A stretch of 64,000 bases of DNA from IMGVR_UViG_3300044712_001937:186001-250000; one strand, 5' to 3'. Positions 32,890 to 48,469 are shown, counted from the stretch's first letter. Numbers and translations are program-made. The notes: generated by a model not told the origin, from the sequence alone.

Positions 32890-33070
32890 TTTTGAATTTA
32901 AGTTCTTTGATATAATTGATATTATTGTTTTTAGTTAAACAATAATTATGGCTGGTTGTACAGCCAAAAGTGAGGTCGAAACCTAAAAAATGAATAATTT
33001 TGAGCAAAGTTTCATAGAACACTCACTAAATATCTTTCATTATTTTTAAATAAAATATTAATTTACAACA
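32890..33070 (+). ncRNA. Putative tracrRNA
   Basis: TATATTTG at 32874-32881; hairpins GGCTG-GTTGTA-CAGCC and AGGT-CGAA-ACCT; anti-repeats TATCTTTCA (33031) and TTTACAAC (33062); 5' end approximate. Confidence 0.65.
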
Positions 33071-33086
33071 AATTACATAAAGGTAT

Positions 33087-33451
33087 GTTGTAAACAACCA
33101 CAAATTGAAAGGTACTTACAACTATTTGGACATAGAAGTACTGATTATATCAGTTGTAAACAACCACAAATTGAAAGGTACTTACAACTCATTACTTACC
33201 TGCCTTTCTTTTATCTAAGTTGTAAACAACCACAAATTGAAAGGTACTTACAACGTGCTGGTAGTCCTCAGATTCGTTTAATTGTTGTAAACAACCACAA
33301 ATTGAAAGGTACTTACAACTATTCAATATACAAGAAATGTATTAAAAGAGTTGTAAACAACCACAAATTGAAAGGTACTTACAACCTATGGTTAGGATAC
33401 TGTTATTTTTTTCATGTTGTAAACAACCACAAATTGAAAGGTACTTACAAC
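33087..33451 (+). CRISPR. CRISPR array: 6 identical 36-nt repeats, 5 spacers (30,30,29,30,30 nt)
   Basis: Repeat GTTGTAAACAACCACAAATTGAAAGGTACTTACAAC at 33087, 33153, 33219, 33284, 33350, 33416. Confidence 0.98.
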
Positions 33452-33487
33452 AGTAGGAGAAGTTCGGGTTCGATTCCCACTACTCTA
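33452..33487 (+). pseudogene. tRNA T-arm remnant
   Basis: GGG-TTCGATT-CCC directly after the last repeat. Confidence 0.4.
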
Positions 33488-33500
33488 TTAAAATTAATTT

Positions 33501-33596
33501 GGTGCTGTTTGTAATGTTGGCTATACATTTTGTCCATGAAGCGTAAAGTGAAGTATGGCAAGCTCAACGTAGGTTCAATTCCTACCAGCACCACCA
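33501..33596 (+). tRNA. 96-nt tRNA-like RNA with encoded CCA and non-canonical anticodon arm
   Basis: GGTGCTG/CAGCACC-A-CCA; D-stem TGTA/TACA; T-arm GTAGG-TTCAATT-CCTAC. Confidence 0.75.
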
Positions 33597-33795
33597 AAAA
33601 ACCAACCGTTATACAGTATAAGCACTGATGTACCTAATAGTGAAGGTGTGATATGCATGAAAGCAAATTATTGTTGTGGGACGGCAATGGTTGTACAGGG
33701 AGTGTACCCTACACTCATAGGGACTGTGTAGATAAATCCTTTACTTGACTGGAAACTCATTTATGAAGAATCAAAAGGTCAGGTAAAGGATTTTT
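33597..33795 (+). ncRNA. Unidentified structured RNA or long terminator
   Basis: GC-enriched non-coding stretch; CAACCGTT/AATGGTTG; GAGTGTA/TACACTC overlapping CCCT/AGGG; AATCCTTTACTTGAC/GTCAGGTAAAGGATT. Confidence 0.5.
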
Positions 33796-35231
33796 CATAA
33801 ATTTGGATATATGGTGTTATAACATAATTGAGCAATTAATTTATGTCCAAGATTTGTACTATGTACTTTATCGTTTAAATAGTAAGTTGTATTATCGGCA
33901 TCAACCAATCCATTAAAAGCTGCATTAGTTGTAATAGGAATTGATATATAATTATTTTCTATTTGACCATTATCTATTAGAATATTTAACGCCTGTGATA
34001 TAGTCCAAAAAGTATCCCATTGACCTGCTGTATACCCAGCAGGTTTCATTGGTCTATTATGTATAACATATGTTTTAAAACCTTTAGCATTAGATGCGTT
34101 AACCAAGTTTATGATGTTAGCATAAATATAATTTTCATTTTTACCCGAAATTAAATCATTAGCACCAATCCAAATAATACTTATATTTTTTTGATAAGAC
34201 AAGTTATAAGCTGCATCTAAATGTGCTTGATAGTTAATTTTCATATCATCACTATTTTGACCGGGGACTGCATCATTAGTTAATATTCTCATTTTAGCCC
34301 CCATTAACAGAGTTTTCAGTTCAGTAGGATAATCTGTAGTAGCTCCTGCATATGCATAACTTAATGAATCACCATCAGTTAATATATTAATGGAATATGG
34401 AATTTTGGGTGTTATTGAATCAACAAGCAAATACTCAAAATCATCGGAAATTGTTTTGTTTAATTTTGAAAAAATAAAAAAATCAGCAGTAGTACCATTA
34501 CAAGAAAAAGCAGCTCCATTGTTTCGAGAAAATAAATTAAGTGTATTTGTTGTATTTGAATTAGCAATTAATGTTCCATTTCTACCAGATAATATTAAAT
34601 TTCTATTTTTGTACAATTCAGCTCTATCATCATTATATATCCATCGAGCTATCATTTTATCTAAACCCCAATTAGTAACAGTTGCATTACCTCCATTATC
34701 TACAGTAGTACGTCTTACAGCCCATGTATATCCATAATTTTGATGTAAATAATTTCCGTTTACTGATAAAACATTTGTTCCATGTTCCATCATAAGCCCA
34801 GCAGGTGCTTGGAAATTGCCAGTTAGAAAGACATCTATCCAAGTTGGTAATACTAATCCAGCAATATTAGATGTTTTATTAGTAACATTTGCCGATGGTT
34901 TGTTATTTAAAGTAACATCAGTGATATTGTATAAATATTGTTTTGCTGTATCAGTTTGTATTTCATGAGCTGTAGAAAATAAATTATATCTTTTTACAAT
35001 CTTATTATCTGTAATTTTTATTCCTGCCCTTGTTGATAATCCAACTAATCCTGACGAATTAATATTATTATTTTTACAAAATTTTAATATATTATTTACA
35101 TAATTTAAATCATTAATAATTCCTCCATCTGCTTCAACCATCTTCTTATATAATAATGTTTCAGATAACAATATATCATCATTTCTTCCAACTCCAATTT
35201 TATTTGCAATACCAATAGTTAAACGTCCCAT
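33795..35231 (-). CDS. SGNH/GDSL hydrolase with beta-rich N-terminal domain
   Basis: Block I TDGDSLS; block III IGANDL; block V DKVHST. Confidence 0.8.
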   Translation of the reverse strand: MGRLTIGIANKIGVGRNDDILLSETLLYKKMVEADGGIINDLNYVNNILKFCKNNNINSSGLVGLSTRAGIKITDNKIVKRYNLFSTAHEIQTDTAKQYLYNITDVTLNNKPSANVTNKTSNIAGLVLPTWIDVFLTGNFQAPAGLMMEHGTNVLSVNGNYLHQNYGYTWAVRRTTVDNGGNATVTNWGLDKMIARWIYNDDRAELYKNRNLILSGRNGTLIANSNTTNTLNLFSRNNGAAFSCNGTTADFFIFSKLNKTISDDFEYLLVDSITPKIPYSINILTDGDSLSYAYAGATTDYPTELKTLLMGAKMRILTNDAVPGQNSDDMKINYQAHLDAAYNLSYQKNISIIWIGANDLISGKNENYIYANIINLVNASNAKGFKTYVIHNRPMKPAGYTAGQWDTFWTISQALNILIDNGQIENNYISIPITTNAAFNGLVDADNTTYYLNDKVHSTNLGHKLIAQLCYNTIYPNL

Positions 35232-35234
35232 ATA

Positions 35235-35525
35235 TTATCTTCCAACTTGAATAATTGTTGCAGTATTACCACTATGAGCAATTATTTTTTTACATTTTAT
35301 GATATTCCAACCATCACCAGCATTGCTAAATTTAGTACGAATTGATTGGTTTTGATTTAATGGAACAACTGTTAACATACCTTCATCACCATTTACTTTA
35401 ATATAAAAACCAAAACCTGAATTATCAATATAACTTTCAGTAAGTAAATTTACACCAATATCTATACATTCTGATACATTTCCTATATCACTATCTTTAT
35501 TACTTGTTAAATAATTTTGTGCCAT
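35235..35525 (-). CDS. Small hypothetical protein, possibly virion-associated
   Basis: Coupled to the SGNH gene. Confidence 0.7.
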   Translation of the reverse strand: MAQNYLTSNKDSDIGNVSECIDIGVNLLTESYIDNSGFGFYIKVNGDEGMLTVVPLNQNQSIRTKFSNAGDGWNIIKCKKIIAHSGNTATIIQVGR

Positions 35526-35633
35526 ACTTATTAAATTTATTAATAAATACTTAATTTATTATAAAATATATTGATATATGTAACTAAAATTTTTTAATTT
35601 CGTATATTTACCTGAAATTAAATCATTATTTAT

Positions 35634-36017
35634 ATGGAAGCTAATTTTGAACATGAAACAATTAAAATTCCTGATTTTATTTTACTTAAAGAAAGTATTA
35701 AAGAAAATAAACAATTATTAGTTCAGATTGGTCAGTTAAAAGGTGAAATTGATTATTTAAATAATTGTATTAAAGAACTACAAATAAAAGATAAAATTAC
35801 CCAAGGTAATGAAATTGTCGCTAAAATAAAAAAAGAAGAAATGTATACGTTATTAAAAAAACGTAATAATCAATTAGCTAAAAGAGTAAATAGGCAACTT
35901 AAAATAATAAGTAATTTATCTGCTCAAAATATTCAACTTCAAAATAATATTGATTCATTAAAACTTTCTAATGATTTCTCTTTATTTATACCATTAGATA
36001 AAGTAAACAAACTTTAA
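35634..36017 (+). CDS. Coiled-coil hypothetical protein
   Basis: Behind promoter motif at 35580. Confidence 0.7.
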   Translation: MEANFEHETIKIPDFILLKESIKENKQLLVQIGQLKGEIDYLNNCIKELQIKDKITQGNEIVAKIKKEEMYTLLKKRNNQLAKRVNRQLKIISNLSAQNIQLQNNIDSLKLSNDFSLFIPLDKVNKL

Positions 36018-36195
36018 ATAATATTAGTTTATGAATAAAGTATATGTGAATGGTTTTGTCTGGTATGCTGATATAAGCAATAGAATGCTCTATGAAGATT
36101 TAAATAAAACATCCGGTACTTCATTTAAATTTCTTACTGATAATGAAATCAAACAAATTAATGATTCTATTAAATATCCACGTAAATCTTAACAT

Positions 36196-36480
36196 ATGAA
36201 AAATACAAGTTTCGCTTTATATTATATATTAATTTCTATATTTGGTATTGCAATCTTATATATTTTATATATTTCTGTAATTAATCCATTTTCCGGTGTT
36301 AATCAAAAAGTTGTTAATGGAAATTTAATCACAACAGGCATTTATAAAGGAAAAGAAATATTCATATTTAAAGATACTATTCATAGTTTTAGTAATGATA
36401 CAATAAAATACATTCGATATCATCAGGCATTAAATGAAATTAATGCATATGTTAGATTTGAAACCAAAATATGTAAATAA
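36196..36480 (+). CDS. Membrane-anchored hypothetical protein
   Basis: N-terminal TM segment. Confidence 0.65.
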   Translation: MKNTSFALYYILISIFGIAILYILYISVINPFSGVNQKVVNGNLITTGIYKGKEIFIFKDTIHSFSNDTIKYIRYHQALNEINAYVRFETKICK

Positions 36481-36482
36481 TT

Positions 36483-36929
36483 ATGAAATATCAAATTCTC
36501 GCAATTATACATGTTAAATCTGATTTTCCTAAACTTCTGGAGTTTGGAATGGAACATACAGATTTAAATGATTCTATTGAAGCAATGAAGATTTGTGATT
36601 CAGAAGGTGATGCTCATAAATTCTTAATTGAAAAAGCTAAATTATATAATGAAAGACATTTCGGAAATGAAACCGATTTGAAATTAATGCTCAATGAAAT
36701 TGAAATGGGTTGTTTAACTCTTAATGGAGTTACTGCCTACATTTCCGAAGTAGAAGAATGTTATATTATTAGAGTTAAAGAATCCGGAACTGAAATTCAA
36801 CATTACGATAATATTGAAGATGCAAGAATTGGACTTTCAACTTTTGAAGATATTGATATTATTGAAGGAAATTATACTGAAAACTATTATGAAATTTTTG
36901 ATACTTTAACCAATAAAATTGTTGAGTGA
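36483..36929 (+). CDS. Hypothetical protein
   Basis: ORF in run. Confidence 0.7.
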   Translation: MKYQILAIIHVKSDFPKLLEFGMEHTDLNDSIEAMKICDSEGDAHKFLIEKAKLYNERHFGNETDLKLMLNEIEMGCLTLNGVTAYISEVEECYIIRVKESGTEIQHYDNIEDARIGLSTFEDIDIIEGNYTENYYEIFDTLTNKIVE

Positions 36930-37156
36930 TGGTAAATAGTTTAAATAGCCGAATTGTAGAATTAACCAAAATGATTGATGAGTTTGATAAAAAATTTGGA
37001 GAAATAGATGTTAAAACATTAAATCCAAAAGATAGAACTGCATTAGTTAAACTCAAAAAACAGATTAATAAATTTCGTCAACAAAAAAAATCAATGCAAG
37101 ATACATTGAATATGATGAAAAAATTTGGTGCAACTGATATAATAATTGGTGATTAG
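36926..37156 (+). CDS. Coiled-coil hypothetical protein
   Basis: ORF in run. Confidence 0.65.
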   Translation: MMVNSLNSRIVELTKMIDEFDKKFGEIDVKTLNPKDRTALVKLKKQINKFRQQKKSMQDTLNMMKKFGATDIIIGD

Positions 37157-37260
37157 TAGATTTTACATAGATAAACTACAAATACTCGATTATCTATTCA
37201 TAATTTGCAACAATTTCATTTGAAATTCGTAATTCAACAAAACATTAAAACAATTTCAAT

Positions 37261-37449
37261 ATGAAAACATTATTTAAAATCTTAATAGTATTAATCATTG
37301 CACTATTCGTAATTGATTATTTTCATCCTGATGGAAAGATATTCCATAAAGCAGGTAAAGTTGGAAAAACAATCATAAAAGAAGCTCCTGCCAAAATAGG
37401 TAAAGCCTATAATGAGGTTAAAGAAGGTGTTCAAGACTCAACCAAATAA
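37261..37449 (+). CDS. Small membrane protein
   Basis: Behind promoter motif at 37207. Confidence 0.65.
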   Translation: MKTLFKILIVLIIALFVIDYFHPDGKIFHKAGKVGKTIIKEAPAKIGKAYNEVKEGVQDSTK

Positions 37450-37687
37450 GATAAAAATGGAAGGAACATATTTCGTAATCAGAAATTCAGATGGTGAAAC
37501 TACTGTCAGAATTATAAGTAAAGAACAATTACTTGAAGATATTGAAAATGGTGAGTTTGGAGATGTATTGACGGAAATTCCCGAAAACTCCGATACTAAT
37601 TATTGGGGAGAAAGTGTACTTATAATTAAAGGAAAATTAGTAGTACCAATAGCAGAACAAGTAGTGACTAAATACAGTATTGAATAA
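37412..37687 (+). CDS. Hypothetical protein (start probably 37457)
   Basis: ORF in run. Confidence 0.65.
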   Translation: MRLKKVFKTQPNKIKMEGTYFVIRNSDGETTVRIISKEQLLEDIENGEFGDVLTEIPENSDTNYWGESVLIIKGKLVVPIAEQVVTKYSIE

Positions 37688-37950
37688 ATTTAATTAAAAT
37701 ATATGATAAAGAAAAAATGGAAATGGGTAATTGACCAATGGTTAGAAGATAAAGTTTGGGTGAATATTCCAAAAGAACATCAAAGTCCTCATTTTTTCTT
37801 TTTACTTGGTTTTGTAACAGCAATCATAATTTTTACTCTTATAACTTTAATTTAAAATATTAACAGCATATGGGCAATGCAATGAACCCACAATAATCGA
37901 TAATGTTTCTGTCTATTGTGGTTATTTAATATTGGTAACACTTATAATTT

Positions 37951-38190
37951 ATGATGGGTCGTGAAGTAAAAAATCAAAAAGGTGAATATTTTACACTTAC
38001 TGAAGATGAAGAAAAATATGTAAGAGCATTAGAACGATTAAGTAAAATGAATCCCGGAAGAATACAACTAATGGCAAACGGTACAATTAGTATCCGAATA
38101 AATGGAATATGGCATAACGATAGCATAGATGGACATCATAAAGCATTTTCAATTCAATGCGAAGGCGGTGACGGGGGTGATAATTATTAA
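37951..38190 (+). CDS. Hypothetical protein
   Basis: ORF in run. Confidence 0.7.
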   Translation: MMGREVKNQKGEYFTLTEDEEKYVRALERLSKMNPGRIQLMANGTISIRINGIWHNDSIDGHHKAFSIQCEGGDGGDNY

Positions 38191-38247
38191 TTTCTTTTTA
38201 ACTTATATATTAAATAAATTACCATAAACCTTAATAAAATAAATATT

Positions 38248-38619
38248 ATGCCAACAATTAAAATTGAAAAAACATTCGAGATTAGCAACCAAGATATTGA
38301 AGACCTTTTAGTTACAGCATTTGAAGGTGGAATAAATTATTGGTGTGATAAAGTTATCATTAAAGAATATCCGGAGTCATTAGAAGATAAAAATATGTTA
38401 GCTTCTGATATATTGGCTCATGGTGCAGTTTTAACTTTATGTGATGCTGAAAGTTCTGATAAATGGGATTTAACATTAGATAAATTTACCCAAGGTTTAA
38501 AAATGCATCTCGAAAATACTGAATATTCCAGCATGGAAGATTTAATGGATTCTTATGATGCAAATGATGCAGATTGTATTATTCAATATGCTATATTTAA
38601 CGAATTAATATTTGGATAA
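38248..38619 (+). CDS. Acidic hypothetical phage protein
   Basis: AFEGGINYW...DADCIIQYAIFNELIFG. Confidence 0.75.
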   Translation: MPTIKIEKTFEISNQDIEDLLVTAFEGGINYWCDKVIIKEYPESLEDKNMLASDILAHGAVLTLCDAESSDKWDLTLDKFTQGLKMHLENTEYSSMEDLMDSYDANDADCIIQYAIFNELIFG

Positions 38620-38621
38620 TT

Positions 38622-39026
38622 ATGGAAGTTATTGATGTTAAAACATTAGGAAGTTTAGCTACTTCAACATATTTTAGAAATGATAATAAACAAACTATTA
38701 AAGTTGAAGTTAGAATTCGTACTCATTGTAGTGTAGTTAATCAATTAACAACATTTTACTATAATATGTATTTGAGAAAATATAAAGGTAGAAAATTCCG
38801 TTACATTATGACTGGAAATAATCAAGATAAAGATAAATACTCTCAATGGATTGATGAACAAAGTCTCTATATTGCATATCATAATCATTGGAATAATATT
38901 AATCCACTCAAACAATTTAGTAAAACATATTTAAATGGTAATCCTACTTCTTTTTCAGTTGAACCTGTATTACCAGATAAACCAAATGAAATAAAAACCT
39001 TACGTGCTGATAATAAATTTAAATAA
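38622..39026 (+). CDS. Hypothetical protein
   Basis: ORF in run. Confidence 0.7.
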   Translation: MEVIDVKTLGSLATSTYFRNDNKQTIKVEVRIRTHCSVVNQLTTFYYNMYLRKYKGRKFRYIMTGNNQDKDKYSQWIDEQSLYIAYHNHWNNINPLKQFSKTYLNGNPTSFSVEPVLPDKPNEIKTLRADNKFK

Positions 39027-39033
39027 AATAATT

Positions 39034-39391
39034 ATGAGAACACAAATTTTTGCATACAAAGGAATTGTTGCAGCAATTACCGATTTAGAAGATGGTAAAT
39101 TTCTTAATGACCCATTAGCAGGTGGACAATTAGATTGATATAACCAAAGAAGCAAAGGAGTTAATAAGAAAAGCTCCAAGAGAAGGTGGTTCATTTGCAG
39201 CAATAATGCTTACTAAACATGGTGATGGCTCAGATTCATCAATAGGTTTAATCGGATTTAGAAAACATTTATATGCTGGTGAAGACCTGTGTATAGGTAG
39301 GGATTGTGATGTTTCAGTATTGGAAGATTGCAATGAAACCGAAATCGAACTTCCTGTAGATTTTGTTAAGTTTATCGATGAAAACTTTTAA
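39034..39391 (+). pseudogene. ORF split by a +1 frameshift at GAT-TGA-T
   Basis: MRTQIF...GGQLD* (stop 39136-39138) continues in the +1 frame as DITKEAKELIRK...DENF*. Confidence 0.6.
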
Positions 39392-39444
39392 ATAAAATAG
39401 GAAGAAAAATAAAAACCCATGTAAGATTACATGGGTTTTTTTAT

Positions 39445-40341
39445 TTAATACTTAATTCTTCCATCCACACTCCCATCATTACGGATAGATAATTTTTTAC
39501 CGCATCCTTTACATTCATATCTTATTGAATTACCTCTCTTTCCATCTTTAACAATATGATTACTTCCACAATACTTACAAATCATGTTTCTATCTATTAC
39601 CTTATCAACTGGCTTATAATTTAAACATTTATCTTTTTTTCTTTGTAAACTAATATTAGCATCTTTATATATAAAATCAATAAGTTTAAGTATTTCAGAT
39701 GTTTTAATAAAGACTAATTGATATACTATTTGTTTACTTTTACCTCTTGGTAATTTTTCATTTATATTCCAACAATTAATATCGATTGATTTTAAGTATG
39801 AATCTAATTCATAAATAAATGTTTTTGAAACTGAACAAAACTCAATGGTTATTAAATTTTTTCTTTTAGCTCTGATATAAATGCTACCATCAGCATCAAA
39901 AAATCCTCTAATAAAATGAGAAATTAAATTTTCATTAATATCCGGAATTTTTAACATTTCTTTATTTTCATATGATTTTCTTGGGTAAACTCCATTATTT
40001 AATAAATCATGATAAAGTTCTTTTGAAGATTTAGCTAATGATTTTTGTTTCCCTGAATTTTTATTATGCTTAGAAAAATCATATTCTCCAAGATTGAAGA
40101 ATGGGAAATTTTCATGTAGTGAATATATTAAATTTTCATCATCTTTATGAATTGAAATCCTTGTTAAAAATCTAATTCTATTATTTTTCTCAACATAATT
40201 ACTAATAGTACCATCACCATACATAAATCCTAATAAATATGCTTTTTCTTGAGTATCAATTTTTTCTAATTCTCTATTATATTCCATATATTTAAATTTT
40301 CTATAAATACTGTACACATATACAAAAAACCACCAAATCAT
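39445..40341 (-). mobile_element. LAGLIDADG homing endonuclease with C-terminal Zn ribbon
   Basis: YLLGFMYGDGTI and FIRGFFDADGSI; CKYCGS...YECKGCGK; opposite to the local gene direction. Confidence 0.9.
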
Positions 40342-40411
40342 ATTTTTATTTGCAACAATTTATTACATTTGTCGTATTATTGATTACTATAACCAATAAA
40401 AATAAAGTAGT

Positions 40412-42697
40412 ATGATTATCAATATAGATAAATTTTCAGACCAAGAAACAGTTTCAACATGTGAAGAAAATGATATTGTATTATCAAAGGATTCTCAAAG
40501 TATGTTTTTTTCATTATTCACAAAAAACATATACTCAAATCCAATTGGTAGTATAGTTCGTGAAATAACTTCAAATTGTTTTGATAGTCATATTGAAGCT
40601 GGTTGTAATATGCCTGTTTTAATTAAAAAAAGTATAGAAAAAGATACTAATACAAATTACATATCGTTTATCGATTATGGTGTTGGAATGTCACCTGAAA
40701 GAATAGATAAAGTATTTAGAGTGATGTTTTCATCAACAAAACGCTCAGATAACGCACAAATAGGGGGCTTCGGACTCGGTTCGAAAAGTTGCCTTGCTTA
40801 CAAGCGTAGCACAGGTTTTGGCGAAGGTGAATATGACAATTCGTATTATATTATTACAGTATATGATAAGATTAAATACATATACAATATATATGAAGGT
40901 CAAAAATGCCCAAAAATATCCTTACTTCATAGTGAACCAACCGAAGATGGTAATGGTACAGAAGTTAAAATTCCTGTATTAGAAAAAGATTTACGTACAT
41001 TCGAATATGAAATGATACGTCAATTATATTATTTCGAAAATATTATTTTTGAAGGTTTCGACAGCACTAAACTTACAAACGATTATCAAATTATCAGGGG
41101 AAAATCATTCCTATTCAGAGGTAATGAATACAAAGATTCAATCCATGTTTGTTTAGGTAGGGTTGCATATCCTTTAGATTATAATACTTTAGGTTTAAAC
41201 GAATCAGATTATCGTTTACCTGTAGCAATTAAATTAAATGTTGGTGATATAAATGTTGTTGCCAGTCGTGAAGGTTTAGATTATTCTGAAAAAACTATTA
41301 AGGTAGTTAAAGCTAAACTGGAAGAAGTTAAAAGTGAAATTATTGGTTTGATTTCCAAACAATATGAGAACATTGTTACATTGGAAGATTATTTTAAAGT
41401 TAAATCTAAGTTTGGATTTCTTTATTTCTCAAACGGTTTATCTATTAATGTAGGTAATGTTATTAGTGTTAAAGATATTAACTATAAAAACTTTCGATAT
41501 AATTCACTTAAATCAATTCCAAAAGATACTGAATTATTTAAGCTGTTTTTCAATGTTGAAGCTTATGGTAAAAAATTAAATAAGAATGTACACCGTAGAA
41601 CCATATTTTTTGATGGAAGTTTCGATGAAATTCTAAGAAAAAATTTCGTTTACTATATAGATACTCCAATGGAACGTAAAAGAATTAAACGTGCTTATAT
41701 GAAGTCTCTGCATGAAACATATTTTGTAATTAGGAAAAATAATTTCATTCATTCAACTAATAGAGAAACAATTTGTGATTTGTTCAATGTTAATTTTAAC
41801 AGTTTTTACAATAAATCAACTGATGGTCAATGTACGGAACTTACTGATTTTTCAAAAACATTGTTAATGTTAAGAGATGAGTTGTTTGAAATTGTTACAA
41901 AATATCGTCAGGATTATAATGAAGTTAATGTTCCGGAAAATTTCATTCTTGAAAAGAAAAGAAATATTATCGATACTAAGATACTTAGAGAAACTAAAAT
42001 TCAAGTTAAATTCTTTGGTGTCAGTGGTAAAGATAAAGTTAAATTATCAGCATTGTTCGATTTAAACATTCCAATTTTTTATGGTTCACAGGATGATGAA
42101 AATAAATTAAACAATGCCAGATATATTCATACTACATTGTTCGGTGGTGGGTCAATGATTTCATATTATGAAGAATATGGTAATAAAATTAACTTTAATT
42201 CAGATAAAAAGGGTATATTGTTCATAATGTTAAGTAAGGGTAATTTAAAATATATGCAATATTGCAAAAAAGCTTACCATATAGATAATTATTACTGGAA
42301 AATGCTTCATCGTAAAGCTGACATGGTTTATGATTACTTCAACAGTTTTGAATTTATTCAATCATATCAAAACTTATCATCAATGTACAAGTCTAATAAG
42401 TTTGATATAATTAATAAAGATTGGGGACGTAAAATTAAAAAAGTTAATGAATATTATCAAAAAATAATTTCAAATAAAAATAAAAATATTGGTGATATTC
42501 GTCAATACTTAACTCCTTATTTTAATTTATCTAATTTAAATCAAAGTACTGAAAATAAAAAAATAAGCAGTATACTTGATGATATTTATAAATTAAAAAC
42601 TGCTAATGAAAAATCTATTAGGTATATTAATATGCCAAATGATTTTTCAACAGATGAAGTATTAATTGATATATTAAAAAAAGTTATGATATTTTAA
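40412..42697 (+). CDS. rIIA: rIIA-like protein (GHKL ATPase N-terminus)
   Basis: IYSNPIGSIVREITSNCFDSH; DYGVGMS; STKR...IGGFGLGSKS; followed by rIIB. Confidence 0.85.
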   Translation: MIINIDKFSDQETVSTCEENDIVLSKDSQSMFFSLFTKNIYSNPIGSIVREITSNCFDSHIEAGCNMPVLIKKSIEKDTNTNYISFIDYGVGMSPERIDKVFRVMFSSTKRSDNAQIGGFGLGSKSCLAYKRSTGFGEGEYDNSYYIITVYDKIKYIYNIYEGQKCPKISLLHSEPTEDGNGTEVKIPVLEKDLRTFEYEMIRQLYYFENIIFEGFDSTKLTNDYQIIRGKSFLFRGNEYKDSIHVCLGRVAYPLDYNTLGLNESDYRLPVAIKLNVGDINVVASREGLDYSEKTIKVVKAKLEEVKSEIIGLISKQYENIVTLEDYFKVKSKFGFLYFSNGLSINVGNVISVKDINYKNFRYNSLKSIPKDTELFKLFFNVEAYGKKLNKNVHRRTIFFDGSFDEILRKNFVYYIDTPMERKRIKRAYMKSLHETYFVIRKNNFIHSTNRETICDLFNVNFNSFYNKSTDGQCTELTDFSKTLLMLRDELFEIVTKYRQDYNEVNVPENFILEKKRNIIDTKILRETKIQVKFFGVSGKDKVKLSALFDLNIPIFYGSQDDENKLNNARYIHTTLFGGGSMISYYEEYGNKINFNSDKKGILFIMLSKGNLKYMQYCKKAYHIDNYYWKMLHRKADMVYDYFNSFEFIQSYQNLSSMYKSNKFDIINKDWGRKIKKVNEYYQKIISNKNKNIGDIRQYLTPYFNLSNLNQSTENKKISSILDDIYKLKTANEKSIRYINMPNDFSTDEVLIDILKKVMIF

Positions 42698-42757
42698 GTA
42701 ACAAATTCAAATTAATATCGTATATTTACGCAAAACAAAATAACTAAATATAAAATT

Positions 42758-43948
42758 ATGGCAAATAAAATAAGTATTCACGTAGTTAAAACAGGTAATA
42801 CTGTCCACATTAGTCTTGGTGGCAAGCTTATTGATAAAAACTGCGGTAATCCTAAAGAAGCTGATGAGTTATTTAAAATAGTTCTTGCTGCGAAGGAAAA
42901 TCCAAGTGAAGATAACTTACGCAAAATTCGTGCATATGTAAATGAAAAATTGCGTGTAGCATATTTAACAGGATTAGAACATGACCCAGATACTGGTGAA
43001 GTATTCTTGGCAGGTTTCAATACCCCAATTCCTCAAACATTGGTTGATATTATCAGGGAGTATCACGAAAATAAATATCCGTTAACACCAATTTTTAACT
43101 TCTGGAAGTTATTAATGATTAATCCGGATAAGCGTGTACGTGAAAGTTTATTCAAATTTATTACTGCTCACGATTTCTCATTAACAGATATGGGATATAT
43201 GATTGTTTATAAAGCAGTATATTTAAAAGACCAAAAACCTGTTCGTGATACTACTTATGAAGATTTCATAAGCACTCAATATCTTCACGTAAAGAATAAC
43301 TGGAAATGTAGTCCTAATAAATATGTGGTTTATAAAAACCTTGCAGATTTTACTTTTGCAATTACAAAATATGAAACTGCTAAGACTTGGGACGAAAAAG
43401 AAAAAAATATCGAAATTCTTGGTAAACTTGGCGATATCTATTCAGCCATTGTTGTTGAAGATAATAAACCGCTTCAATACACTGATATGTATTCCCAAAC
43501 CATGACCATTGAACTTGGTGTACCAGCGAAGAAGGAAAGAAAAGATTGTGATGCTAATCCAGATAAGAATTGCTCTAATGGATTACATTGCGGTGCAACA
43601 AACTATGTAAGCAATTATGCCAAGAAGACAAGTCATATTCTTGTATGTTTTGTCAATCCAATGAATGTTATAGCAGTACCACATTATAACCATTCAAAAA
43701 TGAGGGTTTCAGAATATTTTCCATTCGCTTTAGCTGAATATGATTTTGATAAGAAAAAGATTTCAATTATTGAAGAAAAATATTTCGAAAATGATTATAA
43801 AGCTTATGAAGTTATAGAACTCGAAAAATTGGTTACTAAAGTGAAATCAGAAGAAAAACCAATTGAAAAAGCACAAAATGCCGAAGATGAAGTACGTCCA
43901 ATGTCTGAATTATTAAAAATTATTGAGGGAAGAATGATTGATTTATAA
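42758..43948 (+). CDS. rIIB: rIIB-like protein
   Basis: YKAV...CSNGLHCG...VNPMNVIAVP...KMRVSEY; tandem with rIIA. Confidence 0.85.
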   Translation: MANKISIHVVKTGNTVHISLGGKLIDKNCGNPKEADELFKIVLAAKENPSEDNLRKIRAYVNEKLRVAYLTGLEHDPDTGEVFLAGFNTPIPQTLVDIIREYHENKYPLTPIFNFWKLLMINPDKRVRESLFKFITAHDFSLTDMGYMIVYKAVYLKDQKPVRDTTYEDFISTQYLHVKNNWKCSPNKYVVYKNLADFTFAITKYETAKTWDEKEKNIEILGKLGDIYSAIVVEDNKPLQYTDMYSQTMTIELGVPAKKERKDCDANPDKNCSNGLHCGATNYVSNYAKKTSHILVCFVNPMNVIAVPHYNHSKMRVSEYFPFALAEYDFDKKKISIIEEKYFENDYKAYEVIELEKLVTKVKSEEKPIEKAQNAEDEVRPMSELLKIIEGRMIDL

Positions 43949-43968
43949 TTAAATTAATTATATTTTGT

Positions 43969-44002
43969 AAAAACCGATATCTTTATAAGATATCGGTTTT
44001 TT
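43969..44002 (+). terminator. Rho-independent terminator
   Basis: AAAAACCGATATCTT...AAGATATCGGTTTTTT. Confidence 0.85.
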
Positions 44003-44016
44003 ATATTTATTTAAAT

Positions 44017-44553
44017 ATGACTAAAGAAGAAAAGAAAATATATCAAAAAAAATATGAAATTGTTAATAAACAAAGAATTAGAGAATTACGTATTCAACGT
44101 GATATAAAAAATAAAGAAAAAATAAGGAATCAACAAATAATATATAAATTAAAAAATTCTGAAAAAATAAAAGAATATAATAAAACATGGCGAAAAAATA
44201 ATTCTGAAAAAGCAAAAGAATGGGTAATGAATAATAAAGATAAAAGAAAAATTATTGATAAAAATTATAAATCAAATAATAAAGAAAAAGTGATTAGTTA
44301 TAAATTAAAGAAAAATTATGGAATTACATTAGCACAATATAATGAAATGCTTACTAATCAAAATAATTCATGCTTAATTTGTAATACTAATCAAAATGAA
44401 TTATCAAAAAAATTAGTAGTAGACCATGACCATTTAACTGGAAAAGTTAGAGGTTTATTGTGTGATAAATGTAATAGAGGATTGGGGCATTTTAATGATA
44501 ATATTGAAACTTTAATTCAAGCAATCAAATACTTGGGGTCTAATAAGATTTAA
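44017..44553 (+). CDS. Endonuclease VII-like HNH homing endonuclease
   Basis: QNNSCLIC...VVDHDHLTGKVRGLLCDKCNRGLG; basic repeat-like N-terminus. Confidence 0.9.
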   Translation: MTKEEKKIYQKKYEIVNKQRIRELRIQRDIKNKEKIRNQQIIYKLKNSEKIKEYNKTWRKNNSEKAKEWVMNNKDKRKIIDKNYKSNNKEKVISYKLKKNYGITLAQYNEMLTNQNNSCLICNTNQNELSKKLVVDHDHLTGKVRGLLCDKCNRGLGHFNDNIETLIQAIKYLGSNKI

Positions 44554-44570
44554 AATTCTGGGACTTTTTT

Positions 44571-44915
44571 TTGCAACATATATTCATAAATTTCGTACTT
44601 AAATATGTAAAAATTAGGAAAAATATGAAAAACGCCAATATTTATCGTAAAGAATTAAGTGAAATTAAAGCTAAAGAAATTGCTTTAAAAAATAGTATAG
44701 GTAAAAGACTTTATACTTTAGCTCTTAATTATCCGGATGCTATTGTAAGTAAAGTTGGTGATACTCCAATTAAAGCTAAAAGAATTGCATCAGCATTTTA
44801 TATTGAATCAATTGAATTATCAGCACAGATTGATTGTATTGAACGAATTGAAAAATATATTGAAAGTATTTCTCCAGTAAAGCAGCTTGAAATTAATTGG
44901 GAAAACATAAAATAA
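44571..44915 (+). CDS. Hypothetical protein (start probably 44625)
   Basis: Behind promoter motif at 44573. Confidence 0.65.
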   Translation: MQHIFINFVLKYVKIRKNMKNANIYRKELSEIKAKEIALKNSIGKRLYTLALNYPDAIVSKVGDTPIKAKRIASAFYIESIELSAQIDCIERIEKYIESISPVKQLEINWENIK

Positions 44916-44922
44916 GAAAATC

Positions 44923-45303
44923 ATGGAACTAATTAAAAAGAAAATTAAAGACTTAATTAATTTTTCATTTGCTGAATCTCAACCCGATGAAAATATTAGT
45001 TTGGCAAAGACCATTAAAAAGGTATTAATAGAACATATTGTTAATGAACTGAAAATACTTTCCAAAGAAAATAATACTATTCTTGGTCGTGTAATTAAGT
45101 TTTCAGTTAATGATTCTTATGCATATTATGTTATTGTTAATATAAGAGATGTAAATGTTGATATTGTTTGGCTTGATTATGGAAAAGGTTATCAGAATCT
45201 TAAATTTACTGAATTTGATACAATTCCTTTTGATTATGCAAATGAGAAAGTACAAAAAGAAGATGAATTTGAAATATCTGAACCTGAAAAAATTAGTATA
45301 TGA
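44923..45303 (+). CDS. Hypothetical protein
   Basis: ORF in run. Confidence 0.7.
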   Translation: MELIKKKIKDLINFSFAESQPDENISLAKTIKKVLIEHIVNELKILSKENNTILGRVIKFSVNDSYAYYVIVNIRDVNVDIVWLDYGKGYQNLKFTEFDTIPFDYANEKVQKEDEFEISEPEKISI

Positions 45304-45575
45304 ATATATTTTTAATTAAAAAAATAATTTGGGGAATAATCACACTAATTGTAATGTTAATGTCATGTATTTGTATTATGTACAGTATTGGTGGTTTCTC
45401 TAAAGCCAAGTTTTTGTTTGCATCATTATCAATATCTTCAAACATATTTAATTTATTATTTATGTTACCAGTTATTGTTTGTTGCTTAATTGCGTTATTT
45501 GTCTGTCTTAAAAAATTTTTCAATTATAATGCAAAACAGAAACTGTTTAATTATGTCAACAATAAAATTTTGTAA
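45300..45575 (+). CDS. Small membrane protein
   Basis: Two TM segments. Confidence 0.6.
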   Translation: MNIFLIKKIIWGIITLIVMLMSCICIMYSIGGFSKAKFLFASLSISSNIFNLLFMLPVIVCCLIALFVCLKKFFNYNAKQKLFNYVNNKIL

Positions 45576-45764
45576 ATCAATATTTTTTATCTAATTTTAA
45601 ATTTTTTAATTTCAAATAAATTATGACAACAAAAATAAGCGAAAACGAAATAAATGAGCAAATTGATTTAGCAAATCAAGCAATTAATGATGGTGGTAAA
45701 TTTACCTTTTTGTCTTATGAAGATGGCGTTAAAACTGCATTAGAATGGATAATGGGTAATACTG

Positions 45765-46247
45765 ATGTTAAACCAATGGAAGATTAATCATATGACTATT
45801 ACTTATCTTAAAGGTGATGTAACATATCCAATTGGTGATGGTAATAAAATAATACCGCACTGTTGTAATGATTCTTCAAAATGGGGGCGTGGTTTCGTCT
45901 TGGCTCTCAGCAAACGTTGGAGAGAACCCGAAGAAGTTTATCGTTCAGTAAAACTAGAAAATCTTATTCTTGGAAAAGTTCAATTCATTTGTGTTGAAAA
46001 TGATATTATTGTTGCAAACATGGTTGGTCAACATGATATTAAACCTAATGAATTAGGCGAACCTCCTGTTAGATATTGGGCAATAAGAAAATGTTTACAA
46101 CAAGTAAACCGCATGGCAAAATTATCTAATTCAACAATACATTGCCCTAAGTTCGGAAGTGGCTTAAGTGCTGGAAAATGGGAAGAGATTGAAAAAATTA
46201 TTATAGAAACTATTGAAGTGGATGTATTTGTTTATGATTTAATTTAA
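45765..46247 (+). CDS. Macro domain (ADP-ribose processing) protein (start probably 45792)
   Basis: YLKGDVT...HCCND...WGRGFV...IHCPKFGSGLSAGKWEEI. Confidence 0.85.
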   Translation: MLNQWKINHMTITYLKGDVTYPIGDGNKIIPHCCNDSSKWGRGFVLALSKRWREPEEVYRSVKLENLILGKVQFICVENDIIVANMVGQHDIKPNELGEPPVRYWAIRKCLQQVNRMAKLSNSTIHCPKFGSGLSAGKWEEIEKIIIETIEVDVFVYDLI

Positions 46248-46253
46248 AATAAT

Positions 46254-46622
46254 ATGGAAAACAAATCTATAAAAATTAATGTACCCGAAGGGTTTGAAAT
46301 TGATAAGGATAAATCAACGTTTGATGAAATTATTTTTAAGCCAAAACAGAGTTTTGAAAAAGATATGTCAGACTTTTTGTTTAATATTATCAATGGTTCA
46401 ACCATGATAATGACTGAAAAGGATGAAGTCACATATTATAAAGATAATGAATGGATTCTGCAACAGGATTTTAAAAAAGATAATTTATGGGTTAGATATT
46501 CATTAATTTGGGTAATTTTTGAGAAAAAATATAGTCTTAACAACCAACAAATCAGTGATTTTATTAAGGGTTGGGTAGAAACCAACCTAAATTGGAAGGG
46601 ATTAACACCAGGTTGCTGGTGA
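46254..46622 (+). CDS. Hypothetical protein whose C-terminus is encoded by a CRISPR-like repeat (copy A)
   Basis: Ends WVETNLNWKGLTP-GCW*, with the stop inside the spacer. Confidence 0.85.
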   Translation: MENKSIKINVPEGFEIDKDKSTFDEIIFKPKQSFEKDMSDFLFNIINGSTMIMTEKDEVTYYKDNEWILQQDFKKDNLWVRYSLIWVIFEKKYSLNNQQISDFIKGWVETNLNWKGLTPGCW

Positions 46623-46675
46623 AGAAACGATTGAAAACAGGTAGAAACCAACCTAAATTGGAAGGGATTAACACC
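46574..46675 (+). CRISPR. In-gene mini-array A (repeat, 30-nt spacer, repeat)
   Basis: GGTAGAAACCAACCTAAATTGGAAGGGATTAACACC at 46574 and 46640 (identical); spacer AGGTTGCTGGTGAAGAAACGATTGAAAACA. Confidence 0.75.
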
Positions 46676-46700
46676 AGATAATATAAAATTTATATAATTT

Positions 46701-47054
46701 ATGTATAATAAACCATTAGTAGTATTAGCAAAGAAATTAGGATTTGAAAGTAAATTTTTTTCAGACCAACCTTGGAAGTTCTCAGAACGTGAACCGATGA
46801 GATATCAATTATGGCTGGAGGAATTAAAACAATGGTTAATCAATAATTATGATTTATATGTTGAAGTTCCAAAAACGATGAGCACTTTTATTAATAATGA
46901 ATCATACAAAAAAACTTATAAATTTACATTTAATATAAAAGATATTACTGATGAGCATTTTAAAACAACTTCTTTAAATGGATTCGATTCATATTTAAAA
47001 GCATTAGAAGTTGGCGTTCATAGAACATTAATTTATATAGATGAAATAAAATAA
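46701..47054 (+). CDS. Hypothetical protein, paralog of 50846
   Basis: LKQWL...YV...F/YxxYxxALExG. Confidence 0.7.
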   Translation: MYNKPLVVLAKKLGFESKFFSDQPWKFSEREPMRYQLWLEELKQWLINNYDLYVEVPKTMSTFINNESYKKTYKFTFNIKDITDEHFKTTSLNGFDSYLKALEVGVHRTLIYIDEIK

Positions 47055-47120
47055 TTATTAAAATATTTTGTATCTTTATGCGATATATTATAAAATAACC
47101 TTATTTAATCCTGAAATTAT

Positions 47121-47531
47121 ATGGACGTAGCTTTTCTAACTACCGATTTTAAACTACCAGATTATTCAAATGAATTATTAACCGCAGCACAAGCAATTGA
47201 AAAACTTAAGGATGAAATTGAAACTATAAATCTAAATAAAACAATTACTGATAAATCTCATGAAATAATATTTGAGCGTATCATTAAAGTTTTAGATTAT
47301 GTTGGAAAATTATCACAACCTTCATTTGAAATTGAGTATAAATTGGAAGAATTGTATATAATAAACTATCCACATTCTCCAGAGCTTGCAAAAAAATTAT
47401 GGCAAGACCACTATGAAAATATTCATCATCCATTCGATTTATTAAAAAACAGATGTTTTAGATTAATTGAAGAATTGGATGCAATATTTCATATAATTCA
47501 CAAAAGGCATCCAAGAAACTGGAAACCATAA
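47121..47531 (+). CDS. Hypothetical protein
   Basis: ORF in run. Confidence 0.75.
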   Translation: MDVAFLTTDFKLPDYSNELLTAAQAIEKLKDEIETINLNKTITDKSHEIIFERIIKVLDYVGKLSQPSFEIEYKLEELYIINYPHSPELAKKLWQDHYENIHHPFDLLKNRCFRLIEELDAIFHIIHKRHPRNWKP

Positions 47532-47559
47532 ACTATTAATATACCTTAAATTTAATAAC

Positions 47560-47967
47560 ATGGAAAACAAATCTATAAAAATTAACGTACCCGAAGGGTT
47601 TGAAATTGATAAAGATAAATCAAGTTTCGAAGAAATCGTTTTTAAAATAAAACAAGATATAAATAAAGAAATGTCAGATTTCTTATTTAAAATCGTCAAT
47701 GGTTGTATGATGAAAATGACTGATGAAAATAAAATCACTTATTATAAGGATGATGAGTGGATTTTACAACAGGATTTTAAAAAGAGTTATTTATGGATTA
47801 GATATTCATTAATTTGGGAAATTTTCGAGAAAAAATATGCTCTTAACTATCAACAAATCAAGAATTTTATAGTGGGTTGGGTAGAAACAAACCTAAATTG
47901 GAAGGGATTAACACCGCGACCTAAATGGAGTAATGTTCCTCATGAGGTAGAAACAAACCTAAATTAG
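47560..47967 (+). CDS. Hypothetical protein whose C-terminus runs through repeat-spacer-repeat (copy B)
   Basis: Ends WVETNLNWKGLTP-RPKWSNVPHE-VETNLN*. Confidence 0.85.
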   Translation: MENKSIKINVPEGFEIDKDKSSFEEIVFKIKQDINKEMSDFLFKIVNGCMMKMTDENKITYYKDDEWILQQDFKKSYLWIRYSLIWEIFEKKYALNYQQIKNFIVGWVETNLNWKGLTPRPKWSNVPHEVETNLN

Positions 47968-47981
47968 AAGGAATTAATACC
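47880..47981 (+). CRISPR. In-gene mini-array B (repeat, 30-nt spacer, degenerate repeat)
   Basis: GGTAGAAACAAACCTAAATTGGAAGGGATTAACACC at 47880; spacer GCGACCTAAATGGAGTAATGTTCCTCATGA; trailer GGTAGAAACAAACCTAAATTAGAAGGAATTAATACC at 47946. Confidence 0.75.
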
Positions 47982-48014
47982 TAAATATTAAACTGTAATT
48001 TACTTCTAACACAG

Positions 48015-48043
48015 AAAAAACCTGTATATTCTACAGGTTTTTT
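48015..48043. terminator. Bidirectional terminator at the strand switch
   Basis: AAAAAACCTGTA...TACAGGTTTTTT. Confidence 0.85.
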
Positions 48044-48258
48044 ATTTTGATAAGTATTTGACCAAGTAAAACTAACACAGAACCAATAATCCACCACCAA
48101 ATATTTTCTTGTATAATATTCCATGTTAATTTCAACCAATCTGGATGATAAAAATAAAAATTTATTAATAATATTATTAAAATAACAGCTCCAAATGCGA
48201 AACAAATTATTGATATTAAAATTCTAAAACCAATTAAATCTTTTAAAAAATTTTTCAT
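48031..48258 (-). CDS. Small membrane protein
   Basis: Two TM segments. Confidence 0.55.
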   Translation of the reverse strand: MKNFLKDLIGFRILISIICFAFGAVILIILLINFYFYHPDWLKLTWNIIQENIWWWIIGSVLVLLGQILIKIKNL

Positions 48259-48268
48259 ATTTTAACTT

Positions 48269-48469
48269 TTAATCATTATCAACACCATCATCTATTAACC
48301 ATCCTAAGAACATTCCAAAGAATAATATCCAACTTAACATTGATAAGAAAAACATTAAAATTCCAGCATCAAAATCAATACTATTTTGTTTCTTATCTCT
48401 TAATAGATATATTCCCCACATAAATGATACAATATATCCAATTATCCATATTTTAATACAAATATTCAT
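48269..48469 (-). CDS. Small membrane protein
   Basis: Two TM segments. Confidence 0.55.
   Translation of the reverse strand: MNICIKIWIIGYIVSFMWGIYLLRDKKQNSIDFDAGILMFFLSMLSWILFFGMFLGWLIDDGVDND

What the first reader, a model, noticed from the sequence alone, without database searches (positions are those of the whole stretch)
33087..47981. In-gene repeats are diverged relatives of the Cas12f array repeat located 13 kb away
Seen in sequence: ungapped alignment gives 24/36 (copy A) and 25/36 (copy B) identity to GTTGTAAACAACCACAAATTGAAAGGTACTTACAAC, with the same 36/30 geometry. The terminal palindrome shows a compensatory change (T2-A35 becomes G2-C35). The tracr anti-repeat UAUCUUUCA pairs 9/9 with the canonical repeat and still 8/9 with the in-gene repeat (G-U allowed). 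Inference: the mini-arrays could supply extra guides to the phage Cas12f, act as RNA anti-CRISPR decoys against a host effector with similar repeats, or share the same host integrase.
Basis: partly seen in the sequence, partly recalled or inferred. Interest (0 to 1): 0.75.

Follow-up and report, generated by a model that had tools for sequence, protein, structure and literature searches.

The report
CRISPR mini-arrays anchored inside phage genes
Two small genes of a 365-kb phage each end in a CRISPR repeat that starts a real, changeable mini-array. The same gene-plus-array design recurs in hundreds of related phage proteins, and I found no description of it.

Summary
The four in-gene 36-mers match the Cas12f array repeat at 24, 24, 25 and 23 of 36 positions. 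They are the four best non-self matches in the window, and composition-matched shuffles give P of about 1e-6.

They are genuine mini-CRISPR arrays, but the main point was missed. Repeat 1 of each array is the last 12 codons (VETNLNWKGLTP) of a conserved small phage protein.
- Related phages carry the same gene followed by 1 to 6 repeats with unique 29-32 nt spacers.
- Near-identical phages carry different spacers.
- The gene-distal repeat is degenerate.
- A profile search finds 624 cluster representatives. Thirty of the top 150 read through a repeat-spacer-repeat unit.

Use by the resident Cas12f is doubtful. Seven orthologous loci define two tracrRNA:repeat duplexes by covariation. The in-gene repeats pair with the central duplex no better than non-cognate repeats, and they fail the 3'-terminal duplex (4 of 6 against 6 of 6).

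The complete phage genome has no Cas1. The resemblance sits in the leader-proximal two thirds of the repeat. The best reading is therefore that both array types are filled in trans by one host integrase. The effector that uses the mini-arrays is unresolved.

The parts
31417..32865 (+). cas12f (482 aa), a type V-F effector
   Evidence: Pfam Cas12f1-like_TNB at 5.9e-18. The best solved relatives are Cas12f nucleases 9nzr and 9nzo at E 6e-48. NCBIfam places it in the guided_TnpB subfamily. Orthologs at 54-71% identity each have a tracr region and an array.
32902..33086 (+). tracrRNA region. The hairpin is at 32950-32965 with loop GTTGTA at 32955-32960. The anti-repeat TATCTTTCA is at 33031-33039, after CACTCACTAA at 33020-33029.
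   Evidence: Alignment of seven orthologous loci. The loop hexamer and the anti-repeat covary with the 3' end and the centre of each locus's repeat.
33087..33451 (+). Main V-F CRISPR array: six identical 36-nt repeats and five spacers of 29-30 nt
   Evidence: No spacer matched the phage collection.
46254..46622 (+). Family gene A (122 aa). Its codons for VETNLNWKGLTP are repeat 1 of mini-array A. The stop codon lies in the spacer.
   Evidence: Differences from gene B by codon position are 19/11/31. The AlphaFold model has pLDDT 76.7 and an alpha/beta fold.
46574..46675 (+). Mini-array A: repeat 46574-46609, spacer 46610-46639, repeat 46640-46675
47560..47967 (+). Family gene B (135 aa), a paralog 76% identical to A. 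The ORF reads through the spacer into repeat 2, where TGG has become TAG.
47880..47981 (+). Mini-array B: repeat 47880-47915, spacer 47916-47945, degenerate repeat 47946-47981 (3 changes)
48015..48043 (+). Intrinsic-terminator-like hairpin 34 nt after mini-array B. It suggests the array is transcribed as the 3' end of the gene's mRNA.
   Evidence: It is the only terminator-like site in 45500-48400.

Best explanation
The two loci are genuine CRISPR mini-arrays built on a fixed seed. The seed is the last 12 codons of a conserved small phage protein, which double as the leader-proximal first repeat. The body of the gene takes the place of the leader.

Shown:
- The gene-plus-repeat fusion is conserved.
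- The number of repeats varies from 1 to 6.
- Spacers are 29-32 nt and differ between near-identical phages.
- The gene-distal repeat decays.
- The repeat belongs to the same sequence class as the phage's V-F repeat.

Inferred:
- The complete phage genome encodes no Cas1, so new spacers are probably inserted in trans by a host Cas1-Cas2 integrase. The same integrase probably serves the Cas12f array. This would explain the shared 36/30 geometry, the shared polarity and the similarity concentrated in repeat positions 1-26.
- The array is probably transcribed with the gene and cut into guides used in conflicts with other mobile elements.
- The effector is not settled. The resident Cas12f-tracrRNA pair looks like a poor fit, so a host effector or an unrecognised one is slightly favoured.
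- Embedding repeat 1 in a selected coding sequence would protect the seed from loss, so the array could regrow after collapse.
For: Ten close homologs all end in the invariant TNLNWKGLTP, while the rest of the protein is 39-75% identical.

In 21 distinct gene copies with DNA, 18 have at least 2 repeats. There are 43 spacers: 32 of 30 nt, 7 of 29, 3 of 31 and 1 of 32.

Near-identical loci L089, L095, L096 and L097 share the repeat and flanks but no spacer. Terminal repeats are degenerate at the gene-distal end.

The profile search found 624 representatives at E<=1e-3. Thirty of the top 150 carry the C-terminal peptide again 21-23 residues further on.

Nucleotide-level constraint sits on top of the protein constraint. 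The codons CTA, AAT, AAG and ACA are invariant in 12-13 copies. The periodic pattern with the lysine codon AAG hits 13 IMG/VR loci, and the pattern with AAA hits none.

Similarity to the V-F repeat has P of about 1e-6. In-gene repeat classes average 21.6/36 to the window's V-F repeat, against 14.8-18.1 to six other V-F repeats. The similarity lies in positions 1-26.

No Cas1 was found in the 364.7-kb genome, which has direct terminal repeats. V-F arrays beside identical Cas12f proteins also differ in spacers.

There is a precedent for one integrase serving arrays with different repeats: the type II-C and VI-B systems of Flavobacterium columnare (PMC8092290).
Against: - No protospacer was found for any spacer in the phage's own genome, in related phages, in GenBank phages or in IMG/VR. 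One 25/30 match is at chance level.
- No host, no host integrase and no host array with a similar repeat was identified.
- No RNA run was listed, so transcription and processing are untested.
- Overall synonymous-codon identity in the repeat codons (0.68) is not higher than in the rest of the gene (0.72). Most of the conservation could therefore be protein-level.
- Apart from the window's own genome, every record whose completeness is known is a fragment, so co-occurrence with any effector cannot be judged.
Confidence: 0.6

Rival explanations
1. The mini-arrays supply extra guides to the phage's own Cas12f through the resident tracrRNA.
For: Cas12f is the only effector recognised in the complete genome. 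The in-gene repeats are closer to this phage's V-F repeat than to any other V-F repeat. They share its strand and geometry. The central anti-repeat still pairs 8/9.
Against: In the seven orthologous loci the tracr hairpin loop pairs perfectly with the last six bases of the cognate repeat (shifted by one base in L087), with duplex energies of -4.3 to -6.4 kcal/mol. In-gene repeats give 4/6 non-contiguous pairs and -1.8 to 0 kcal/mol. Their central duplex (-6.2) equals non-cognate repeats (-2.0 to -6.6), against -8.9 for the cognate pair. All ten in-gene repeat classes end in ACACC or AGACC, never in ACAAC. G001 carries 16 such repeats but has no Cas12f ortholog and no tracr motif in its 218 kb, which is 66% of the genome.
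Confidence: 0.22
2. The repeats are RNA decoys (Racr-like) or hijacked guides for a host effector whose repeat they mimic.
For: Phage mini-arrays and solitary repeat units with these roles are known (PMC11656645, PMC10651486). Some homologs carry a single in-gene repeat without a spacer (L008). The core AAATTGRAAGG also occurs in 47-nt type II-C-like repeats of Flavobacteriales (L032 and L040).
Against: A scan of 185,579 species genomes for the periodic core found no array whose repeat matches beyond the core, with a best of 21-23/36. A looser pattern in 401 Bacteroidia genomes gave nothing. Known Racrs are non-coding and match host repeats at 90% or more. Rapid spacer turnover is not needed for a decoy.
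Confidence: 0.2
3. The arrays are neutral by-products. A host integrase mistakes a repeat-like codon string for a repeat, and the inserts have no function.
For: The peptide is under protein-level selection, and variation falls almost only on synonymous sites. No target was found for any spacer.
Against: Eighteen of 21 gene copies carry spacers. The design persists across very divergent family members, including a 42% GC element with five tandem gene-plus-array modules. Several synonymous sites are invariant, and the AAG codon is always used in genomes of 26-33% GC.
Confidence: 0.15
4. The units are protein-coding tandem repeats, for example variable cassettes between conserved recognition peptides, and are not CRISPR arrays.
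For: The period is 66 nt, which is 22 codons. Many ORFs read through two or three units.
Against: Eleven of 43 spacers are not multiples of three. Gene A stops four codons into its spacer, and repeat 2 of array B carries a stop. Distal repeats decay.
Confidence: 0.03

Closest known systems
Virus-borne mini-CRISPR arrays (for example the Saccharolobus portogloboviruses SPV1 and SPV2, as summarised in PMC11656645)
   Same: One or a few spacers sit in a viral genome with no adaptation genes nearby. The virus presumably relies on Cas proteins encoded elsewhere, and the role is presumably in conflicts between viruses.
   Different: Known examples have repeats identical to the host's arrays and spacers that hit related viruses. 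Here no host match and no target was found. The first repeat is the coding 3' end of a conserved gene family, which the papers I read do not describe.
Type V-F (Cas12f) arrays with tracrRNA, including the one 13 kb upstream
   Same: Repeats are 36 nt and spacers about 30 nt, with the same polarity. Identity is 24-25/36, concentrated in positions 1-26.
   Different: The arrays are not next to cas12f or the tracr region. Their 3' end is ACACC instead of the ACAAC that pairs with the tracr loop in every ortholog.
Spacer acquisition in trans between CRISPR types (type II-C Cas1-Cas2 filling the VI-B array in Flavobacterium columnare, PMC8092290)
   Same: Arrays without their own integrase gain spacers. 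The two repeats have equal length but different sequence and share a motif at one end.
   Different: Here the recipient arrays lie on a phage and inside genes. The donor integrase has not been identified.
RNA anti-CRISPRs and solitary repeat units (PMC10651486)
   Same: A CRISPR repeat is carried by a phage away from cas genes. Some homologs (L008) have a lone repeat.
   Different: Racrs are non-coding small RNAs with their own promoter that closely mimic a host repeat. These repeats are coding, carry spacers and match no known host repeat.

Membership tests
CRISPR array (repeat-spacer array built by spacer integration) | Direct repeats of constant length separated by unique spacers of nearly constant length | tested here: met
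   Repeats are 36 nt. The 43 spacers are 29-32 nt, with a mode of 30.
CRISPR array (repeat-spacer array built by spacer integration) | Spacer content differs between otherwise near-identical loci, and the array is polar with a degenerate terminal repeat | tested here: met
   L089, L095, L096 and L097 share the repeat and flanks but no spacer. Degenerate repeats sit at the gene-distal end.
CRISPR array (repeat-spacer array built by spacer integration) | Spacers match protospacers in mobile elements | tested here: inconclusive
   No match was found in the phage's own genome, G001, G002, the other loci, GenBank phages or IMG/VR. Shuffled spacers give 0.6 chance hits per set.
CRISPR array (repeat-spacer array built by spacer integration) | Transcribed and processed into crRNAs | not testable with these tools
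   No RNA run was listed. Only a terminator-like site after array B bears on this.
Cognate array of the window's Cas12f-tracrRNA | The last six bases of the repeat pair with the tracr hairpin loop | tested here: not met
   The pairing is 6/6 in six of the seven orthologous loci and shifted by one base in L087. In-gene repeats give 4/6 non-contiguous pairs, -1.8 to 0 kcal/mol against -4.3 to -6.4.
Cognate array of the window's Cas12f-tracrRNA | The centre of the repeat pairs with the anti-repeat that follows CACUCACUAA | tested here: inconclusive
   The pairing is 8/9 with two G-U pairs. Its energy of -6.2 kcal/mol lies within the non-cognate range (-2.0 to -6.6), and the cognate value is -8.9.
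Cognate array of the window's Cas12f-tracrRNA | Lies beside cas12f and the tracr region | tested here: not met
   The arrays are 13 kb away, among genes for an rIIA-like ATPase, endonuclease VII, a LAGLIDADG endonuclease and an SPFH protein.
Host-exploiting viral mini-array | Repeat identical or nearly identical to a host CRISPR repeat | tested here: inconclusive
   None was found in GTDB species genomes with the periodic core pattern, nor in 401 Bacteroidia genomes. The host is unknown.
RNA anti-CRISPR (solitary repeat unit) | A lone non-coding repeat without a spacer that closely mimics a host repeat | tested here: not met
   The window copies have two repeats plus a spacer and lie in coding sequence. 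No host repeat matches.
Protein tandem repeat or multi-cassette precursor | Units keep the reading frame and lack stop codons | tested here: not met
   Eleven of 43 spacers break the frame. There are stops in spacer A and in repeat B2.

The most novel reading that the evidence does not exclude
A large phage protein family carries a built-in CRISPR seed. Its last 12 codons serve both as a conserved peptide and as the leader-proximal repeat, so phages without any integrase can grow and regrow their own guide arrays using host adaptation enzymes. The protein itself may take part, for instance by recruiting the integrase to its own gene or by handling the RNA. This would be a new way for viruses to own CRISPR memory. 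It would also be a rare case of one sequence selected both as protein and as a CRISPR repeat.
Probability: 0.35. Interest if true: 0.9.

Novelty: new variant of a known kind. Interest (0 to 1): 0.8.

Why it matters
Phage mini-arrays are known, but they are described as non-coding copies of host arrays. Here the first repeat is hard-wired into a conserved gene in hundreds of protein clusters, from genomes of 26% to 42% GC. The arrays still change their spacers.

If this holds, it shows how viruses can keep a CRISPR array without an integrase and without losing it. It also gives a simple sequence signature for finding such arrays. Current array finders and gene callers would misread them as ORFs, or as arrays too short to report.

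It also gives a natural experiment on what an integrase needs from a repeat, as opposed to what an effector needs. The two array types in this phage share the leader-proximal part and differ at the effector-facing end.

Tried and rejected
1. Chance similarity. Rejected by the whole-window scan and by shuffles.

2. A conserved terminal palindrome with a compensatory change. Rejected because pair 2-35 is mismatched in other repeat classes. Single-repeat folds are not unusual, with z scores of -0.07 to -2.25.

3. A second tracrRNA matched to the in-gene repeat. Conserved tracr motifs occur once in G000 and not at all in G001 or G002. A hairpin-loop scan for GGTGTT or GTGTTA followed by an anti-repeat found only the arrays' own antisense strand. 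That scan was crude, so this is not excluded.

4. Fold of the family protein. The model has pLDDT 76.7. There was no PDB match at E<=0.001, and AlphaFold DB matched only uncharacterised proteins. Pfam, PHROGs and NCBIfam gave no hit apart from one marginal reverse-transcriptase match for gene B (E 0.009, below cut-off).

5. Host arrays. My recalled Cas13b-like repeat pattern found nothing in 401 Bacteroidia genomes. That pattern came from memory and is not evidence either way.

6. Rfam. No CRISPR direct-repeat family matched.

7. Population variation from public runs. The runs hold only contigs, which break at the repeats, so this was uninformative.

8. The search for related loci. With the family alignment it failed because the family is too divergent. 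With Cas12f it found nothing in IMG/VR.

9. Family genes next to Cas12f orthologs. None lies within 3-4 kb.
Full report
SETTING

The window is bases 186001-250000 of a 364,702-bp virus record. The record has direct terminal repeats, is rated complete, and is 26.3% GC. Public runs that hold it are rhizosphere metagenomes.

At 31417-32865 lies a 482-aa Cas12f. It has the Pfam Cas12f1-like TNB domain. Its best solved relatives are Cas12f nucleases at E 6e-48, and NCBIfam places it in the guided_TnpB subfamily. It is followed by a 220-nt non-coding stretch and then an array of six identical 36-nt repeats at 33087-33451.

THE OBSERVATION

They match the main repeat at 24, 24, 25 and 23 of 36 positions, on the same strand.
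- No other 36-mer on either strand of the window exceeds 22.
- One million shuffles of the in-gene repeat average 10.5 matches. They reach 24 once and never reach 25.
- Each pair of repeats encloses a 30-nt spacer.
- No further array of this geometry exists in the genome.

WHAT THE REPEATS SIT IN

Repeat 1 of each mini-array is the last 12 codons of a small gene. The genes are 46254-46622 (122 aa) and 47560-47967 (135 aa), and their products are 76% identical paralogs.

The genes are real. Differences between the paralogs fall 19/11/31 on codon positions 1/2/3. The model folds as an alpha/beta domain with pLDDT 76.7.

Ten close homologs are 39-75% identical overall, yet all end in the invariant TNLNWKGLTP followed by unrelated short tails. 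The tails are translated spacer.

THE ARRAYS ARE REAL AND ACTIVE

Contigs that carry homologs show the same gene followed by 1, 2, 3, 4 or 6 repeats at a 65-68 nt period.
- Of 21 distinct gene copies, 18 have at least one spacer.
- The 43 spacers measure 30 nt (32 spacers), 29 nt (7), 31 nt (3) and 32 nt (1).
- Eleven of these break the reading frame, and several carry stops. The downstream units are therefore not coding, which removes the protein-repeat reading.
- The gene-distal repeat is often degenerate. The gene end is therefore the leader end.
- Loci L089, L095, L096 and L097 have the same repeat and almost the same flanks but no spacer in common.
- The V-F arrays behave alike. Three loci with an identical Cas12f protein have zero, one and one spacers, and the two spacers differ.

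HOW WIDE THE DESIGN GOES

A profile of the ten homologs finds 624 cluster representatives at E<=1e-3 among 1.84 billion proteins. Nearly all matches run to the C-terminal motif, roughly (V/I/L)E..L..KG.TP.

In 30 of the top 150, an eight-residue stretch recurs 21-23 residues further on. This is the footprint of an ORF reading through a repeat-spacer-repeat unit. It is a lower bound, because a stop in the spacer hides the array. The repeated peptide differs between lineages, so the repeat diverges with its gene.

One 42% GC contig has five tandem gene-plus-mini-array modules that were called as a single 760-aa protein.

No Pfam, PHROGs or NCBIfam family covers the protein. No solved fold matches it.

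TWO LAYERS OF CONSTRAINT

Among 13 repeat variants of the close group, variation falls almost only on synonymous sites of the gene's frame. This points to selection on the peptide.

Some synonymous sites do not vary. CTA, AAT, AAG and ACA are fixed in 12-13 copies. A periodic search of IMG/VR finds 13 loci with the lysine codon AAG before GGN and none with AAA, in genomes of 26-33% GC. The stretch AATTGGAAGGG is invariant within the close group. A similar core, AAATTGAAGGG, appears in some repeats of the 42% GC element, where the peptide differs.

Overall synonymous identity in the repeat codons (0.68) is not above that of the gene body (0.72). The nucleotide-level layer is therefore local, not general.

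RELATION TO CAS12F

Orthologs of the Cas12f at 54-71% identity come with the same layout: gene, roughly 220 nt, then an array of 36-nt repeats.

Aligning seven loci shows a conserved hairpin. In six loci its loop hexamer is the exact complement of the last six bases of that locus's repeat: GTTGTA with TACAAC, GTTGTG with CACAAC, and GTTGCA with TGCAAC. In the seventh, L087, six bases of a larger loop pair with the repeat one base in from its end.

A stretch after CACTCACTAA changes in step with the centre of the repeat.

The in-gene repeats meet the central rule at 8/9. Their duplex energy (-6.2 kcal/mol) equals that of foreign Cas12f repeats (-2.0 to -6.6) and falls short of the cognate pair (-8.9). 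They fail the terminal rule, with 4/6 non-contiguous pairs and -1.8 to 0 kcal/mol against -4.3 to -6.4. All ten in-gene repeat classes end in ACACC or AGACC.

G001 is a 218-kb relative, 66% complete, with 16 such repeats. It has only an ordinary TnpB, no Cas12f ortholog and no tracr motif. Five other records are 6-54% complete and show no Cas12f.

Use by the resident Cas12f is therefore possible but not favoured.

WHERE THE SIMILARITY LIES

In-gene repeat classes average 21.6/36 identity to this phage's V-F repeat, against 14.8-18.1 to six other V-F repeats.
- Over positions 1-26, the window's own in-gene repeats score 18-19 against its V-F repeat. The V-F orthologs score 13-18.
- Over positions 27-36, all in-gene classes score 5-6 and the V-F orthologs score 7-8.

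The leader-proximal part is the part an integrase must recognise. The 3' part is what the tracrRNA and effector see.

The genome has no Cas1. One integrase is known to serve two arrays with different repeats of equal length in Flavobacterium columnare (PMC8092290). I therefore infer a shared host integrase for both array types. This is inference, not demonstration.

WHAT IS NOT KNOWN

No spacer has a target in the phage's own genome, in G001 or G002, in the other loci, in GenBank phages or in IMG/VR. One 25/30 match is at the level of shuffled controls.

In-gene spacers are richer in G+C (33.7%) than the phage (26.3%, P 8e-6). They are therefore not drawn from these genomes.

No host array with a similar repeat turned up. 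The 47-nt repeats of two Flavobacteriales share the core and 24-26/36 with the V-F repeat, but only 21/36 with the in-gene repeat.

No RNA data were listed. The neighbouring genes are not cas genes. A terminator-like hairpin directly after array B fits transcription as part of the gene's mRNA.

VERDICT

The resemblance is real, and the loci are genuine, dynamic mini-arrays. The surprising part is that they are anchored in the coding 3' end of a large, unannotated phage gene family. I did not find this in the reviews and papers I could read.

The mechanism I commit to has four parts:
- a gene-embedded first repeat with the gene as leader;
- filling in trans by a host integrase shared with the V-F array;
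- guides for conflicts between mobile elements;
- an effector still open, with the resident Cas12f a minority option.

Noticed in passing
window 33452-33486 and 33501-33596: The last repeat of the main array abuts a tRNA 3' fragment (T-arm GGTTCGATTCC plus acceptor strand). A 96-nt tRNA-like gene follows. ARAGORN calls it tRNA-His with anticodon ATG. Rfam scores it just at the tRNA threshold and also gives a partial tmRNA match.
   Followed up: partly
L062-L065, 3692-3850 (just upstream of the cas12f ortholog P0017): A 52-aa ORF directly before cas12f carries the N-terminal motif of the in-gene-repeat family (INVPDGYEIDKEKSTFEKIVFK), at E 0.005 against the family profile. It is a faint link between the two systems. 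Nothing similar lies upstream of the window's cas12f.
   Followed up: partly
L099 9001-11283 (JGI contig of 148.5 kb, 42% GC): Five tandem modules, each a family gene body plus a 1-3 repeat mini-array, were called as one 760-aa protein. An ordinary TnpB gene lies 9 kb upstream.
   Followed up: partly
L062, L063, L064 (identical Cas12f protein P0017): The V-F array has one repeat and no spacer in L062. L063 and L064 have two repeats, with different spacers. Spacer content therefore changes while the protein stays identical.
   Followed up: partly
window 32902-32982: The 5' part of the tracr region gives a weak match to the Rfam family 'DUF2693 RNA' (22.8 bits, E 0.8, far below threshold). It is probably chance.
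   Followed up: no
window 19649-19706: Rfam finds a tRNA (43 bits) only 58 nt long that ARAGORN does not call.
   Followed up: no
G000:C1:144562-144720 (outside the window): A second, weak match to the Cas12f/TnpB zinc-ribbon domain (22.3 bits, below cut-off) lies in a 245-aa open frame.
   Followed up: no
window 39445-44553 and 48720-50621: The neighbourhood of the mini-arrays holds a LAGLIDADG homing endonuclease, an rIIA-like HATPase protein (761 aa), endonuclease VII and, on the minus strand, an SPFH/Band 7 protein. The SPFH gene has 33-nt coding tandem repeats at 48979-49135.
   Followed up: partly
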